DNA of 64,000 nt from Klebsormidium nitens (Eukaryota; Plantae; Klebsormidiophyceae): positions 124,001 to 188,000 of the forward strand of contig DF237018.1 in the NCBI GenBank assembly GCA_000708835.1, given 5' to 3'. Positions 36,057 through 42,385 of the stretch are shown here, one piece after another. The translations under genes were made by a program, and so were the position numbers. Within the stretch, counting starts at the first letter, position 1; each line of letters opens with the position of its first letter. Under the pieces are notes generated by a model, which saw only the letters and a program-made list of their open reading frames with translations, did no database searches and had not been told where the DNA came from.

Positions 36057-37860
36057 GTCCTTGGGCTAGTGCTAAATGTGTTGGCCTGTCGTTTAAGCTC
36101 AGGGCCTCGACCTGAATAGTATAAGTTAGGTCTGTCTCATAGTTCGTTGACGTGCAGAGTGTGCGTGGCTGAGGTTCACTAGTTGGTCACGGTTGCTAAA
36201 ACAGACTGTGTTGTTGGCTAGCCTGGGCGTTGCGTGCAGAACTGCGTTGGACAGTCGTGTTTGTTCTTACAGAATGGCAAATCTTAGTTTGTTTGTACAT
36301 AGATGGATCACGACTTTTTGCAATTGTAGCACAGGAACGATCCAGCAGCTGGCCCTAAGGTTCGGCTGTAGCCAACTCCACGCTTTCCTTTTGACAACGT
36401 CACTGCTTTTTGTGGACGAAGTGAGTCTGGGTCGCTCCATCGGGTGAATCGGATTTGGGGCAGATTCATACTTCTACACACATATCTTCTTTAATTTACG
36501 GTTATCAAAGTTAAGTTTCAAGATGGCCCTAGAAAGATTGGATAATTTGATTGTCGGGCAGAACACGGCCGCCGCCCCGAATGATGTACTCATATTAAGC
36601 TACATGTGCTTTGGCTTGCGGGCTTCTAGTGTGACGATAGGGTATGTATGTACGCACCAGTGACATGCTGGCACCGGCCCGTGCCTACCTGACCTATCGA
36701 CGGTTCGAACGCATTCTTCATGCGAAAGTTCGACTTGGCAATCAGGTTGCATTCATGAGCTGCCGTACTTAAGTTATTTTACGATTGACATGTGGCCGAC
36801 GAGATCAGTCATGAGTGCTTGAAAGTGATCGGACGCGTGATCTCGTGGATGGTCTACACATCATCGGGTGCAGTGCACCGTCCCTTAAATGGACTGCGGC
36901 TTGCAATCAGTATATGCATCTGGATTGGATTCCTTGCAAGGTTGCGGATCGATCATTCCTACCAGCCTAAGATTATTAAGATTGTTGAATCGTAAAGGCG
37001 GCCCCGGGCAGGGGACAGGGCGCCCCGCATTTTGCACTGGCAGATAGCAAAAAGGCCTGCGATAATCTAGTGGATGTCTGTTGCGATTTGAACTCCTCCA
37101 GGCCAATCAACGACTAGATGACCAGATGCCGGCCTGCCATGCCAATCGTTTTGCAAGTCTCACGGACTGAGCAGCCGGACAGCCTCAAACTGCATGAGCC
37201 ATTGCCCCCATGTTTCAATTCCTTCCGTGTTCTGAAACCAGGTTGGATCACTAACTTGCCATAACCTGGATGCACTTGATATCCTTGCACTTGTCCTCCT
37301 CGTTTTCCAACACACTTCTCATTATGTAGATTATCTCAGACTGCTGCAACAGCAGAATACACAAAATGGCAGAGAGTGTGCTGACTGACGAACCGCATGC
37401 CATGACAAACGAAGATTCCATCAGGCACAGACGTGGCAGTCTATCTGGCAAGTCCATCTAGAAGTCCGGCTTATATATACAGTTGACCCGACAACCGAGT
37501 GCAAGCTTGGCTTTCCACGTCAGCCCTGCCTCCCGCAGTCAATTGACCAAACACCGCAGCCCCAAGTATGAGCTTGCTCGACTACCCTACCGATTATGGT
37601 AGCCGGCTCCCTGCATCACAAGCAAGTTTGGGAGTCATGTACAAGAACTTACAGTATAAGAAGCTGACTGAGAGGGTGAAGCAAAGCCCAGAAGCTTCCT
37701 GTGACTCATTACGTTTTGGCGACCAGACACCGCATGCATGGCCATGTTGGTCGCCGAGGCAGAACTTCGAGATGCAATTCAATGTGTACAACGATTGAAA
37801 TGCAAAAAAAATACATAAGATGTGCGAAGCCACAGCTTTGATGAACGAGGAACGCACCGG

Positions 37861-40800
37861 TCATGAGTAAGTGCTCCCCTCTGGCGGCTGCTGCAGCTTC
37901 CGATTCTGCGGCTGCGCCATTTCCCGCCGGAGGTCGGTGAGGATCTTCTCCATGTTGTACGAGCGGTCCCAGTTCGCTAGGGTGCTAAAGTGTCGGGGGT
38001 CTACCTGCGTGACACGTGAGAGCAAGGAGATTCATATCTGCTTATGAGAACTGAACTTGCTCATCAGACTGTGCTGTGCATAATTGGGTCACGCTTCTTG
38101 GACGTCCAAGGCCTTCCCAAATACCGACAATGACCTCATAGTAGCTGCTCCAACAAGCTCCTTGTCCTATCCTTAGAAAAGCCGGTAAAAAACTCATTGG
38201 TTGCGAAGTCGGACGCAAATGTGCGAAAACAAAGAAAAGTGGGTCTCGAGATTCAGACTAAGCCATTGATCCTCTGCCAAGCAGCTTGCGCCCAAAAGTT
38301 GCATGTACTGGAAGTGTACTCGTCTGAACTTGCAAAACACAGCCGATTGATTGAAGCCAGCACTACTGCAGATAGAGACGGAATCACTCCTGACTTTCAA
38401 ATTCTGGCTTGCTACAACAAGACTTGCAACTTTCCTTCGAAGTACCCTTGTCCAACAATCGACTTGTAAACATTAGGATAAATTCTTTCCCATCCACCAT
38501 CACTGCGGAACAACATGACAGCCAACATCTCTGGCACTGCCCAAGATCTCAAAGCTGGAGCCACATAATACATAGAACCATACGGTATGGAATCTGTACA
38601 TAAACGAGAAGACAGCGAACCCAAGCAAGCCCTTCGCGAAGGTCGAACCTATTCTTACTGTGCAATAGGGAGCGGCGGTGCAGAGATTAACAGTAGGGGT
38701 GCCTCAAGGGCCGAACTCAAGCTGCAAATGCCAGGTGTCAGCGACTCAATGGTGCAAAGGTTCACGACAGCCCACCGCAGGGTCCTGCTTACCTTCCCGT
38801 TCTCCTGATTCACGCACGACATGTTGATTCGGCTCTGGAACCGAACAAGGGGCGGGGCCTGGGGATAATCTTTATCGCAGTAAAGCTTCACCGAATAGAT
38901 CCGGTTCTCATGCGTGGTCTGCACAGCAGCACCTTCCGGTGAGTGACAACAACCACAGCCAGCAGAAAACGCTGTCACAATCTGAAACGCTCACCACTCC
39001 GTCCTCTGCCCTCACAACCGACAAGTTGATTCGACTAACGAACTTGACCCGGGGGGGAGCCTCGGGATAGTCTTTATCGCAATAAAGCTTAAGGGAGTAG
39101 ATCCGCCCCTCGTGTGCTGTCTGCAAGGGGAGGAGGGTGACAACGGGGCGAAGGATCAAAGCACCGCCGTTGAAATAAAGCTCCTTTGTTCAACAAAGGA
39201 ACAAACCAAGAAGCTTGTCAAGACTCACGAGGGATTTGTTTTCCTCCCCTTTTTTCAATTGTTGCACACGTTTGACTGAGAAGGCAGTCCTCTAAAACGC
39301 AGTGCAGAGGGGTCAGGCACGTATAAGCATGGACAATTGAAAGGTTGAAAGATTCTGTGAGGGTACAATCAGAATAGGTTGCGTTTCTGACTGCGCACAG
39401 GGCTAAGAGATGAGCAAACGTCACCATTTGAGAAGCGCCATTTGCAGAATATGCTCCTAAGGCCTTTCTCAAAGTTCGCTGCAGTAGCAACCAGCAGCAG
39501 CCAAGGTTGGTTTCCATTATGATCTGGCGTTTGTCCACTTGCAGCTCATCTAGCCTTACAGATCAGCAAGGTGCAGAATTGCTCCACCTGATATAACTGA
39601 TACAAATAAAAGACGAATCAACAGCTGCCAAATCTCCCAGGCAATCTGCTGAATCCTGAGGCTTTGGCTGCTGATTCGAGTCACTACTTGGGGACACCGG
39701 CGAGCTCTGTGGTTCTGGTAACAGAAGAAAGGGACTGAGCATGTGAGCACCTGAAGTATGGAGCAGAACACACTTGAATGTTGACAAGGCTTACTCCAGC
39801 TTGAGAGCGGCTGAGAGCTCAAAGGCCCAGCCTAGCACTGCTCTTAGCCAATCAAAAGCATCCCCCAAAGATGCGCATCTGCACAAATTTTTTACGACAC
39901 AACAAAAGACTATTCACTTTGTTGAAAAGATGGGCCAAGGCTACGACAGACTCACATTGTTCGGCCCAATGATGGTGCCTGTCCACGAGCGCATGAAAAG
40001 GTCGTCCCCGTCGTCCATTCCGTAACTGACATTTCCATCGCCAAACCCTTTCTCTCCCTTTTCCAACTCCTCTAGCAGTCTGAAATTGCGAGGCACTGCA
40101 GGGGAGAGCAGCAGCACGTCAGGGCAGGTCCACGCTGTCCTCTTACTCAAAAGGACAACGTTTGGCTTCTGAAAGAAAACCTGTTCTCGACACATCAGCT
40201 GACTTTAACCACAGCCGATCAGACCTACATTACAGGTCTCATGATCATCATTGCTTACGTGAGTTGGTGTTGGATGCAGAGCCTATTTCAAAGAAATCTG
40301 AACTCTGACCGCTTTGTTTGATCGAATCTAAAAGCAAGCATGCATCAATCATGACAAGCACTTCTGCTCCAATCACAAAAGCCGTATCAGAGATTGCAAA
40401 GAGGAGCGAGACCAGTTGGTAAAGGTTTTCAAGCTTTCTAGAAGACTGCAAGACTAGAACGTCCAAACGCAGAAAGCAGGCACTGCACGCGCTACCGCAA
40501 ATGGAAAAAATGTCCCAGACCACTTGACTTCAGGTGAAACGCATTTTCTGCATAGTCTATTGGTCTTAAAGTGTCCAGGTGAGGTAGCAGTCTGATAGAA
40601 TTGAGGACTTCGAGCGCCAGAGCCAAGTAAGCAAATAGAACACTTTGAAAGCAAAACGCACCTCCCAGAACTTCTTGGGTTGCCATGAAACAAGTTTACT
40701 GACTGATGCTACAGCTGCTTGGAAGGGTGTTACAGCACGCCAACCTGCTGCTGACAATCAAATTTTGACAAAATGCAGGGTTGTTGAAGTATTACAATCA

Positions 40801-40925
40801 GAAGACTCCCCCTCTGTGCAACAAATGAACACGTATAACAGGACCATAAGACAGACAATCAGCCGACTAACTGGAACTCGCAAGTTAAGGTTCTCACCAA
40901 CCACACTCTGGCCAGACGCAGCCAT
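37861..40925 (-). CDS. UEV1: Ubiquitin-conjugating enzyme E2 variant UEV1/MMS2. Exons 40898-40925, 39956-40095, [38995-39120 or 38793-38918], 37861-38004
   Basis: Spliced product [36 protein letters not shown]...[10 protein letters not shown]...[16 protein letters not shown]...[29 protein letters not shown]...PPEGSTYS*. This is the canonical UEV signature, and all junctions are GT-AG and phase-compatible. Confidence 0.95.
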
Positions 40926-42385
40926 GGCGACCGCCTTAGAATACGAAAGTAATCAACTCCTAGCTGCGTATGTCCGCAGCGCTCCTTTCACAATCTAAGA
41001 ACAAACCCAGGATCCGCACAATATCAGTTCAGATCAAGAGAGAGTGGGCAGGGAGATTTGCAAACTATCTTATCCAAGACCAATGAGCCACGTATGTCCG
41101 CTAGGATACTTTCCTGTTGAAACCTGAATGGCAGGGCAGAAAGGAGCGCCTTTTCTTGCTCCCTTTATGTTTGTCTTCTTGTGGCTCGAGGCCGGCGGCC
41201 GCCCAGGCAATACCTCTAGGCTCTCCGCATTGAGCAACTAGGACGGCGGTTGCATTTGTCTCTCTTTCGATTACCGGTTGATGTCAATGCTGAGTGTCCG
41301 ATCCGGTTGACAAGTCGGAGCCATCTTGACCGTTGATGGAAGTCCGTGAAGCAATTTTTGTTTGGACGGCTCCGCTCGCGCACAGCACAGCTCTTCCAGC
41401 GGGCGGGCTGAAGTTTTCTGAAAAGTTGCTCTCAGAACCGGCGTGGAGGTCGGTTACCGTAGTCTCCGCACAATGCCTCGGGGACTCGAACTTAGTCCAG
41501 ACTCACTGACTCAGTCGATAGCCAACACTCCGGCTGTACTGAAGATTTCAAACTGGGCACTCGGCGACGCTTGTCAAGCTAAACCCGCTGACAAATCCGG
41601 GACCGCTGGCGGGGGCGGCGCGATTGCCGGAGGGCGCTCCGCATGAGCAAAGCACTGTCAATTTGGTCTCAGCCTGCATCATTGAGGCGTCAGATGGGGG
41701 CAGTGCGCGCACGGACAGCGCCCAAGCTGGGCCTGGGCCCTACCTACTTAGATTGGCAGGATCAGGGCCGAGCATTGAACCACTTGGCGTATCAAACAAA
41801 GACAAAAGCCTAACGGCCAGTCGGGCGAAGTCCCACCCTGCCCTCATTCTGCAGGACTTGTGAGCTGATTGGTCTGCTAGCAGCTGGCTGCGTGCTCTTG
41901 CCTAGTCCCTGAAACATCATGGCCAGCCACAAGCCCTTGAAAAGGCCGAATGTGAGAACGCTTTTGAAGAGGAAGCTCCACATTGTTCCGAGCACATCTG
42001 CAAAACTTTTCTTGCATTATCCTGCGGCTGTTAGAAGGAAAAGGAAGAAGCGCAAGCTTTCAGGAGCAGGCCTGAAGCTGGAAAGCAGGACAAGTCGACG
42101 TTCTGCGACAGCGGTAAGCGGGCCTCCGTTTTCCTGCGTTGTGACATCATGAGAATTTTTGGGCTGTTGCTGAAACGAGGGGCTGGAGTCTTTCTACTTG
42201 CATTCTCTCCTTTTCAGCTGGTGGTTCCGCAATTATCTTACAGAAACACAGGTAAAGGAAAGTAGAAAGCTGCGGCTGTGTCGACACCAGCTGAGCTTAC
42301 TTCCAAAGCAATGCATTGGAAAAAACTGCTTATATGGCATGATAAACCCGATGTTTGTTGCAGTAGTAGTGTTGACTCTTGCATT

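What the first reader, a model, noticed from the sequence alone, without database searches (positions are those of the whole stretch)
38793..39120. Candidate mutually exclusive exon pair in UEV1/MMS2
Two adjacent exons are each exactly 126 bp, phase 0/0, with intact AG and GT sites, and encode the same 42-aa segment. A (38995-39120) reads [42 protein letters not shown]; B (38793-38918) reads [42 protein letters not shown]; 29/42 residues are identical. The DNA has many synonymous differences and no stops or indels, which implies selection on both. Only 76 nt separate A's donor from B's acceptor, against introns of 835 and 788 nt on either side, consistent with steric exclusion. Including both would duplicate part of the UBC fold. 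The Ubc13-binding N-terminal helix is in a shared exon, so one gene could make two K63-chain-building isoforms with different surfaces; flowering plants such as Arabidopsis use separate UEV1 paralogs. Mutually exclusive splicing is considered rare in plants. I cannot check whether this case has been reported.
Basis: partly seen in the sequence, partly recalled or inferred. Interest (0 to 1): 0.8.

Follow-up and report, generated by a model that had tools for sequence, protein, structure and literature searches.

The report
Either-or twin exons in algal UEV1
The single-copy-looking UEV1/MMS2 gene of the alga Klebsormidium nitens carries two side-by-side versions of one 126-base exon, and its mRNAs contain one or the other but not both, so one gene makes two versions of the helper protein that builds K63-linked ubiquitin chains.

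Summary
On the minus strand, exon A (38995-39120) and exon B (38793-38918) are each 126 nt and phase 0/0, with GT-AG sites and a 76-nt spacer. They share 29/42 residues (dN/dS 0.20, dS about 1.25), and both align to UBE2V1 residues 53-94.

RNA-derived contigs from four public runs all hold exon2-B-last exon. One run also holds exon2-A and A-last exon with B skipped. No run holds an A-B or exon2-last-exon joint.

Independent support comes from two K. subtile Trinity isoforms of one gene, both 145 aa, that are exactly the A-form and the B-form. Two environmental transcripts from another Klebsormidium (dS 0.61 in constant exons) keep exon A at 41/42 residues. Marchantia, Sphagnum and Chara braunii have the same exon boundaries but a single copy, so the duplication is specific to the Klebsormidium lineage.

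The GenBank model (GAQ81051.1, 117 aa) mis-splices A into B out of frame.

How exclusion is enforced is not shown. U2/U12 incompatibility and NMD are excluded, and I found no RNA-structure signal. Steric hindrance is plausible but borderline.

The scan has flagged about 22 other twin-exon candidates in other genes of this genome, but not this locus. I found no paper describing this case.

The parts
40898..40925 (-). Coding part of exon 1 (MAASGQSVV plus the first base of the Val10 codon). The 5' UTR extends upstream to at least 41169.
   Evidence: Sequence. The joint 40095|40898 is in all four runs, and contigs reach 41122-41169.
40096..40897 (-). Intron 1 (802 nt, GT-AG)
   Evidence: A joint skipping 802 nt is in all four runs.
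39956..40095 (-). Constant exon 2. It encodes [21 protein letters not shown]...[10 protein letters not shown], which holds the Ubc13-binding helix alpha1 and the Ser/Thr acceptor-ubiquitin contacts.
   Evidence: interface residues from PMC7647121.
39121..39955 (-). Intron 2 (835 nt), removed when exon A is used
   Evidence: The joint 39120|39956 is in run X1.
38995..39120 (-). Alternative exon A (126 nt, 42 aa: [42 protein letters not shown])
   Evidence: Joints to exon 2 and to the last exon are in X1. Full-length A-forms are P0154 and P0155.
38919..38994 (-). 76-nt spacer between A's donor and B's acceptor. It is never seen removed on its own.
   Evidence: No 76-nt joint in four runs. Its fold is no better than shuffled sequence, z = +0.85.
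38938..38950 (-). GTTGTCACTCACC, the candidate branch region of exon B. The candidate branch adenosines are 51 and 55 nt from the start of the spacer and 25 and 21 nt from B's acceptor.
   Evidence: Direct repeat D3 matches the motif upstream of A at 39132-39144; motif scan. The branch point has not been mapped.
38793..38918 (-). Alternative exon B (126 nt, 42 aa: [42 protein letters not shown]). This is the default form in the runs examined.
   Evidence: Joints 38918|39956 and 38004|38793 are in all four runs, and X19 and X20 hold full-length B-form contigs. P0153 is the K. subtile B-form.
38005..38792 (-). Intron 3 (788 nt). When A is used, 990 nt are removed, taking B with them.
   Evidence: Joints skipping 788 nt (four runs) and 990 nt (X1).
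37857..38004 (-). Last coding exon (VDPRHF...PPEGSTYS), with the TGA stop at 37861-37863
37610..37856 (-). 3'-UTR intron (247 nt) that starts 4 nt after the stop codon
   Evidence: A joint skipping 247 nt is in all four runs.
37300..37609 (-). 3'-UTR exon. It continues beyond 37300, which was the limit of the stretch laid.
   Evidence: Contigs run over the end of the stretch.

Best explanation
A tandem duplication of about 200 bp within the Klebsormidium lineage copied the third coding exon of the UEV1/MMS2 gene together with short pieces of flanking intron. Both copies were kept and are now spliced in a mutually exclusive way.

Shown: exon 2 joins to B and B to the last exon (the default form). 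Alternatively, exon 2 joins to A and A joins directly to the last exon. Either way the product is a 145-aa UEV. In the one run where A appears, it accounts for roughly a quarter to a third of junction depth.

Shown by mapping to published contacts: the Ubc13-binding N-terminus, helix alpha1 and the loop after beta1 are encoded by constant exons. So are the Ser and Thr acceptor-ubiquitin contacts. The alternative exon encodes beta3, beta4 and the following long loop. It contains the acceptor-ubiquitin-contacting Ile of the RIY motif, which both versions keep.

Inferred: both isoforms pair with Ubc13 and build K63 chains. They differ at 13 positions, which I expect to be mostly surface ones: two flank the RIY isoleucine, four lie in or just before beta4, and six lie in the loop after it. 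This would tune acceptor-ubiquitin handling or partner and substrate contacts, a division of labour that animals and flowering plants obtain from separate UEV genes.

Inferred, about 40% likely: exclusion is enforced because U1 bound at A's donor and U2 bound at B's branch region, 51-55 nt away in a 76-nt interval, cannot coexist. Once A is defined, its donor must then pair with the last exon's acceptor.
For: Anatomy and divergence.

Family assignment exon by exon.

Junction evidence: exon2-B and B-last exon are present in X1, X2, X19 and X20, and X19 and X20 hold single contigs of the complete B-form mRNA. Exon2-A (depth 218) and A-last exon (depth 255) are present in X1, against 647 and 574 for the B junctions. 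No A-B joint and no exon2-last exon joint appears in any run. All contigs are at least 99% identical to the window.

Second species: K. subtile TRINITY_DN552_c0_g1 isoforms i1 and i2 are the B-form and A-form, both 145 aa.

Third source: JGI transcripts L002 and L003 encode a full-length A-form. Against K. nitens they show dS 0.61 and dN 0 in the constant exons, and dS 0.28 and dN 0.011 in exon A.

Lineage restriction: Marchantia, Sphagnum and Chara braunii loci have the same exon boundaries and one copy only. On the tree the Klebsormidium segments form one clade (85/80) with long A (0.33) and B (0.19) branches.

Interface mapping: PMC5325457 and PMC7647121, with S33, T48, I63, F14, L17 and L20 invariant in alignment A1.

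Fold: both isoforms are predicted with the same secondary structure, and the A-form model hits UBE2V1/MMS2 structures best, TM about 0.72.
Against: Exon A was seen in only one of the four K. nitens runs laid, and the evidence there is from assembled contigs, which drop rare variants. A minor A+B or double-skip form therefore cannot be excluded.

The contig depths are flat means and give only a rough ratio.

The condition that raises A inclusion is unknown, because run identities are coded.

No biochemical difference between the isoforms has been shown.

For the steric step: the branch point is unmapped, 51-55 nt is near rather than clearly below the limits known from animals, and an earlier scan follow-up of another twin-exon gene in this genome (s1-355368) reported that a branch-point mechanism was not supported there.
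Confidence: 0.85

Rival explanations
1. The pair is mutually exclusive, but exclusion is not steric. It would instead be set by regulated exon definition. A has a strong polypyrimidine tract but a weaker GTGAGC donor, and B has a weak purine-rich 3' region but a consensus AAG|GTAAGC donor. Trans-acting factors or long-range RNA pairing would then choose one exon.
For: The candidate branch points are 51-55 nt from A's donor, which is not clearly too short. The asymmetry in splice-site strength is visible in the sequence. Inclusion of A differs between runs, which needs regulation in any case. Scan note s1-355368 found no support for a branch-point mechanism in another gene of this genome.
Against: No RNA-structure signal was found. 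The spacer fold has z = +0.85. The intron-2 element complementary to both exons (39611-39623) is matched by 33 of 40 shuffles. Regulated exon definition alone does not explain why neither co-inclusion nor double skipping was seen, although both would stay in frame.
Confidence: 0.45
2. Exon A is a low-level splicing by-product of a relic duplicate, and only the B-form matters biologically.
For: Three of the four runs show only B. B is slightly closer to canonical UEVs.
Against: Exon A is intact and conserved at 41/42 residues in a species with dS 0.61 in the constant exons, giving dN/dS of about 0.04 for exon A. It is also kept in K. subtile with one conservative change. It reaches about 25-30% of junction depth in X1. 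The two environmental transcripts found are both A-form.
Confidence: 0.05
3. A and B are sometimes co-included, giving a 187-aa protein with a duplicated beta3-beta4 segment that contig data miss.
For: Co-inclusion keeps the frame, because 126 is 3 x 42, so NMD would not remove it. Contigs drop rare variants.
Against: No 76-nt joint appears in four runs, including X1, where A junctions have depth above 200. The exon-B search admitted proteins up to 194 aa and found no such product. The deposited model that links A to B does so out of frame and is unsupported by any joint.
Confidence: 0.08

Closest known systems
UEV paralog pairs: human UBE2V1 (UEV1A) and UBE2V2 (MMS2), and Arabidopsis UEV1A-D
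   Same: These are catalytically inactive UBC-fold cofactors that bind Ubc13 through the N-terminal helix and position the acceptor ubiquitin for K63 linkage. More than one version exists per organism. The best sequence and fold matches of both exons and of the A-form model are these proteins.
   Different: There, the versions come from separate genes and, from my own knowledge, differ mainly at the termini. Here, one gene makes two versions by exon choice, and they differ only in the beta3-beta4-loop core segment.
Two-exon mutually exclusive pairs attributed to steric hindrance, such as alpha-tropomyosin exons 2/3. The class is listed in PMC6071210.
   Same: Two adjacent homologous exons are separated by a very short intron, and exactly one is included. 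The mechanism applies only to pairs.
   Different: In alpha-tropomyosin the branch point lies about 41 nt from the upstream donor (my own knowledge). Here the candidates lie at 51-55 nt and are unmapped, so the steric criterion is not demonstrably met.
Docking-site/selector competing RNA structures (Dscam, 14-3-3 zeta, ATE1; PMC6071210, PMC7797038)
   Same: The pair arose by tandem exon duplication, which can also duplicate a selector sequence. One intron-2 element is complementary to the same stretch of both exons.
   Different: That complementarity is not above shuffled controls, and no second genome is available to test whether it is conserved.
Other twin-exon genes of K. nitens flagged in this scan (DTC carrier, prolyl 4-hydroxylase, NHX antiporter, MATE transporter, an RRM splicing factor)
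   Same: Same genome, same layout of tandem same-length exons, RNA support for either-or use, and public annotation that holds one form at most (unchecked scan notes).
   Different: These are different genes and proteins, and I did not re-test them. The UEV1 pair is in frame, so NMD cannot police it.

Membership tests
UEV1/MMS2 (ubiquitin E2 variant, Ubc13 cofactor) | UBC fold, with closest similarity to UEV proteins rather than active E2s | tested here: met
   The top PDB sequence hits of each exon are all UBE2V1, UBE2V2 or Mms2. PF00179 is precomputed on P0151-P0155. The A-form model has TM about 0.72 to UBE2V1/MMS2, against about 0.55 to active E2s.
UEV1/MMS2 (ubiquitin E2 variant, Ubc13 cofactor) | Ubc13-interface residues in the N-terminus and helix alpha1 (Pro, Phe, Leu, Leu of the [10 protein letters not shown] motif) | tested here: met
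   P11, F14, L17 and L20 are invariant in alignment A1 and encoded by constant exon 2. The interface definition is from PMC7647121.
UEV1/MMS2 (ubiquitin E2 variant, Ubc13 cofactor) | Acceptor-ubiquitin contacts (yeast Ser27 and Thr44; the Met/Ile/Ile hydrophobic surface) | tested here: met
   S33, T48, I51 and I63 are conserved, and I63 (the Ile of RIY, exon position 7) is present in both A and B. Residue equivalence was inferred from spacing and alignment, not from a solved complex.
UEV1/MMS2 (ubiquitin E2 variant, Ubc13 cofactor) | No catalytic HPN-Cys active site | tested here: met
   The equivalent stretch reads SRINLSVV in A and SRINMSCV in B. Neither has His-Pro-Asn. From my own knowledge of E2 motifs, the Cys in B, three residues after the Asn, is not at the catalytic spacing.
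UEV1/MMS2 (ubiquitin E2 variant, Ubc13 cofactor) | Binds Ubc13 and promotes K63-linked chain synthesis | not testable with these tools
   This needs recombinant protein assays.
Mutually exclusive exons arising from tandem exon duplication | Adjacent homologous exons of the same length and phase | tested here: met
   Both are 126 nt and phase 0/0, with 70% nt and 69% aa identity.
Mutually exclusive exons arising from tandem exon duplication | Mature transcripts that contain A without B and B without A | tested here: met
   Joints; the K. subtile i1 and i2 isoforms and the JGI A-form transcripts.
Mutually exclusive exons arising from tandem exon duplication | No, or negligible, co-inclusion and double skipping | tested here: inconclusive
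   Neither joint was seen in four runs, but contigs can drop rare forms.
Mutually exclusive exons arising from tandem exon duplication | Both copies under purifying selection | tested here: met
   A versus B gives dN/dS 0.20. Exon A between species gives dN 0.011 and dS 0.28. B is identical in K. subtile at the protein level, and B against the L001 segment gives dN/dS of about 0.10.
Steric-hindrance type of exclusion | Distance from donor to branch point below the spliceosome's minimum | tested here: inconclusive
   The candidate branch adenosines are 51 and 55 nt from the start of the 76-nt spacer. The branch point is unmapped, and I found no intron-length minimum for K. nitens.
U2/U12 spliceosome-incompatibility type | One U12-type and one U2-type splice-site pair | tested here: not met
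   All donors are GTGAG or GTAAG and all acceptors are CAG. There is no ATATCC or GTATCC donor.
NMD-policed type | Co-inclusion or double skipping shifts the frame | tested here: not met
   126 is 3 x 42, so both aberrant forms stay in frame.
Competing RNA structure (docking/selector) type | A docking site complementary to selectors at each exon, beyond chance or conserved | tested here: inconclusive
   One shared complementary element exists (I6 and I10), but it is no better than shuffled sequence, and no orthologous genomic sequence was available.

The most novel reading that the evidence does not exclude
Klebsormidium uses a condition-switched, sterically enforced pair of either-or exons to make two functionally distinct Ubc13 cofactors from one gene. 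One would be a default form, and the other a stress- or field-induced form with an altered acceptor-ubiquitin or partner surface. That would be a splicing-based equivalent of the UEV1/MMS2 gene split of animals and the UEV1A-D family of flowering plants. It would also be one visible case of an unusually twin-exon-rich genome in a lineage where this splicing mode is thought to be rare.
Probability: 0.3. Interest if true: 0.72.

Novelty: new member of a known kind. Interest (0 to 1): 0.55.

Why it matters
Mutually exclusive splicing of duplicated exons is well known in animals but seldom documented with RNA evidence in the green lineage. This is a clean case in a close algal relative of land plants. 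It is conserved across Klebsormidium species, and it sits in the cofactor that sets K63 linkage specificity for Ubc13, which acts in DNA-damage tolerance and in signalling.

It also gives a natural experiment on alternative splicing versus gene duplication as routes to UEV diversity. The two variants are minimal, differing at 13 residues, and both are evidently tolerated by selection, so they are ready-made probes of the beta3-beta4-loop surface.

Practically, the public gene model at this locus is wrong (a truncated 117-aa product), and neither correct isoform of K. nitens is annotated.

Together with the other twin-exon candidates that the scan noted in this genome, this case suggests that a genome-wide study of K. 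nitens splicing would be worthwhile.

Tried and rejected
1. A docking/selector RNA structure. The intron-2 element at 39611-39623 is complementary to the SRIN-coding stretch of both exons. However, 33 of 40 shuffled introns also give a site shared by both exons, so I rejected it as evidence.

2. A special fold in the 76-nt spacer. Its energy is -20.2 kcal/mol against a shuffle mean of -22.7, z = +0.85. There is no signal.

3. Dating the duplication against the L001 relative. dS is saturated, the outgroup-polarised characters conflict, and the ML tree is a polytomy. This stays unresolved.

4. Genomic orthologues of the spacer. No second Klebsormidium genome was reachable.

5. The organism behind SRR10920916. 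No paper mentions this run.

6. Intron-length statistics for K. nitens, to judge whether 76 nt is too short. I found none in PMC4052687, PMC6142364 or PMC11096116.

7. A first attempt at duplex-energy shuffles timed out and was replaced.

8. Joined spliced sequence. Exons were searched one at a time by reference. For the word-index search I used the stop-free reading frame running through each exon and scored only the exon part. For full-length work I used database proteins P0153 and P0154.

9. The representative search with exon A gave mainly land-plant UEV1 proteins and no Klebsormidium entry, because of the 50% clustering.
Full report
**Observation.** On the minus strand the window holds a UEV1/MMS2 gene.
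- The ATG is at 40925, and exon 1 ends at 40898 in phase 1.
- Exon 2 is 40095-39956, exon A is 39120-38995 and exon B is 38918-38793.
- The last coding exon is 38004-37857, with the TGA stop at 37863-37861.
- A further 247-nt intron (37856-37610) lies in the 3' UTR.

Exons A and B are each 126 nt and phase 0/0, with CAG acceptors and GTGAGC or GTAAGC donors. They share 88/126 nt and 29/42 residues. Differences fall 11/8/19 on codon positions 1/2/3, which gives dN 0.25, dS 1.25 and dN/dS 0.20. Each exon alone aligns to the same residues (about 53-94) of human UBE2V1, and to MMS2 and yeast Mms2. Each also aligns to UQ_con profile positions 40-79. The window holds no third copy. With one of the two exons the product is 145 aa, the normal UEV length. 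With both it would be 187 aa.

**Organism and annotation.** The exon-A search returned GAQ81051.1, 'Ubiquitin-conjugating enzyme E2 [Klebsormidium nitens]', at 100% identity. That agrees with an earlier scan note on neighbouring DNA. This deposited model is 117 aa. After exon A it enters exon B at an internal AG (B's last 40 nt, 38832-38793) out of frame, and then reads the last exon out of frame to a premature stop. I verified this by translating the pieces. No RNA joint supports that model. Neither correct isoform is annotated for K. nitens.

**RNA evidence.** I laid Logan contigs of four public runs from different studies on 37300-41200. Spliced joints at depths of 200-700, against intron depths of 3-28, show that the runs are RNA-derived.
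- All four runs hold the joints exon1-exon2, exon2-B (38918|39956), B-last exon (38004|38793) and the 3'-UTR intron.
- In X19 and X20 a single contig is the complete B-form mRNA.
- Run X1 also holds exon2-A (39120|39956, depth 218) and A-last exon with B skipped (38004|38995, depth 255). The B joints in that run have depths 647 and 574.
- By these rough contig depths, A is about 25-30% of the junction depth in X1 and not above the precursor level in X2.
- No run has an A-B joint (removal of the 76-nt spacer alone) or an exon2-last exon joint.
- All laid contigs are at least 99% identical to the window, so the A-form does not come from a contaminating strain.

**Independent support.** The 90% cluster around P0152 contains two Trinity isoforms of one K. 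subtile gene (EukProt EP00243, TRINITY_DN552_c0_g1 i1 and i2). Both are 145 aa and identical except for the alternative segment. Isoform i1 carries exactly the B segment. Isoform i2 carries the A segment with one Asp-to-Glu change. The cluster also holds P0155, a full-length A-form encoded by two JGI environmental transcript contigs (L002, L003). Against K. nitens those contigs show dS 0.61 and dN 0 in the constant exons, and dS 0.28 and dN 0.011 in exon A (41/42 residues). Exon A is therefore under strong purifying selection between species. Only the A-form of that environmental species is in the collection. That hints that A can be the major form outside culture, but the collection is incomplete: the K. 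nitens B-form is also missing from it.

**Age and distribution.** A more distant relative (L001, from SRR10920916, organism not identified) has dS 1.58 and dN 0.028 against K. nitens in the constant exons. It has one known form, and its segment is intermediate: 83% identical to B and 76% to A.
- In an ML tree of the 42-residue segment the three Klebsormidium types form one clade (85/80) that is unresolved inside.
- The intermediate type sits almost at the node (branch 0.009), while A (0.33) and B (0.19) sit on long branches.
- Characters polarised by outgroups conflict: B plus intermediate share N5 and K42, A plus B share A21 and S34, and A plus intermediate share L33. I could not decide whether the duplication preceded that species.
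- Outside Klebsormidium the nearest UEV1 proteins come from bryophytes, Chara, Mesotaenium and Chlorokybus, at about 67-77% identity, each with one segment type.
- At the DNA level, Marchantia, Sphagnum and Chara braunii have the same exon boundaries (the homologous exon begins after ...GPNN/GPNH/GPSN and the next exon begins VDPR/VEPR) and only a single copy in the gene plus 3-kb flanks.

The exon is therefore ancient, and its duplication is specific to the Klebsormidium lineage.

**What the switch changes.** The UEV side of the Ubc13 interface is the N-terminus, helix alpha1 and the loop after beta1, with Pro/Phe/Leu/Leu and a Phe or Met in that loop (PMC7647121). All of this is encoded by constant exons 1-2. 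So are the Ser and Thr acceptor-ubiquitin contacts.

The acceptor-ubiquitin hydrophobic surface is given as Met54/Ile56/Ile67 (PMC5325457). By spacing, these correspond to T50, I52 and I63 here. The last is the Ile of RIY at exon position 7, and it is kept in both A and B.

The 13 differing positions in the exon are 2, 5, 10, 20, 24, 26, 28, 33, 35, 37, 38, 40 and 42. Positions 5 and 10 flank that Ile on beta3. Positions 20-28 lie in or just before beta4. Six of the last ten residues, in the loop after beta4, differ. A is the more charged version there (E20, R24, K26, R37, D40).

AlphaFold models of both isoforms have the same secondary structure (beta3 63-69, beta4 80-83). Mean pLDDT is 75.5 for A and 64.7 for B, and the alignment is shallow. 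The A-form model matches UBE2V1/MMS2 structures best, with TM about 0.72.

I infer that both isoforms pair with Ubc13, and that they differ in fine handling of the acceptor ubiquitin or in contacts with other partners. This inference is untested.

**How exclusion might work.** PMC6071210 lists four known mechanisms.
- U2/U12 incompatibility is excluded, because all sites are U2-type GT-AG.
- NMD policing is excluded, because 126 is a multiple of three.
- Competing RNA structures have no support. The spacer folds no better than shuffles, and the one intron-2 element complementary to both exons is matched by shuffled introns.
- Steric hindrance remains. A motif, GTTGTCAC, is shared upstream of both acceptors (D3) and probably marks the branch region. 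In the spacer its adenosines lie 51 and 55 nt from A's donor and 25 and 21 nt from B's acceptor.

From my own knowledge, that distance is close to the minimal donor-to-branch distances reported for animal spliceosomes, but not clearly below them. Flowering-plant introns of about 70 nt can be spliced. I found no published lower bound for K. nitens introns. An earlier scan follow-up of another twin-exon gene in this genome reported that a branch-point mechanism was not supported there. I therefore rate steric exclusion at about 40%.

The short spacer needs no adaptive explanation. It is simply what a tandem duplication of about 202 bp, covering the exon plus short intron edges, leaves behind (D1).

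**Context and novelty.** Searches of the paper library found nothing on mutually exclusive exons in Klebsormidium, on UEV1/MMS2 twin exons, or on exon duplication in Klebsormidium relevant to this gene. The scan's own notes list about 22 twin-exon candidates in other K. nitens genes, several with RNA support, and widespread tandem copies of exon edges in its introns. Those notes are unchecked by me, and none concerns this locus. I class the finding as a new member of a known kind: tandem-duplicated, mutually exclusive exons. It has good RNA and comparative support, an open enforcement mechanism and an untested functional consequence.

Noticed in passing
window 38793-38832 and 37985-38004 (minus strand): GenBank protein GAQ81051.1 (117 aa) for this gene joins exon A to an internal AG inside exon B out of frame and ends at a premature stop in the last exon. 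None of the four runs has that joint, so the deposited model is wrong and both real isoforms are unannotated.
   Followed up: yes
window 37610-37856 (minus strand): A 247-nt intron in the 3' UTR begins 4 nt after the stop codon and is spliced in all four runs. It is too close to the stop to be expected to trigger NMD.
   Followed up: partly
L002 266-703 and L003 256-693 (JGI samples 3300030743 and 3300030631): Two environmental transcript contigs from another Klebsormidium species both encode the A-form, and no B-form of that species is in the collection. This hints that A may dominate under field conditions, but the collection is incomplete.
   Followed up: partly
window 39611-39623 versus 39025-39036 and 38822-38834: An intron-2 element (UGUUGAUUCGUCU in the RNA) is complementary to the SRIN-coding stretch of both exon A and exon B. 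That is the layout of a docking site with two selectors, but shuffled introns do as well.
   Followed up: yes
window 38938-38950 and 39132-39144 (minus strand): The motif GTTGTCAC is conserved upstream of both alternative acceptors. It is the only recognisable remnant of the duplicated intron flank and is probably the branch region.
   Followed up: partly
protein P0128 (representative library, 114 aa): An animal-like UEV fragment contains the 22-residue stretch DPPSAKFISRVNMNGINSSTGV twice in tandem, in the same part of the fold. It could be an assembly artefact or another exon duplication in an unrelated organism.
   Followed up: no
L001 202-639 (Logan SRR10920916): An unidentified relative has a UEV1 transcript whose alternative-segment homologue is a near-perfect intermediate between A and B, and it sits at the base of the Klebsormidium clade with an almost zero branch length. 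Whether that species has one exon or two is unknown.
   Followed up: partly
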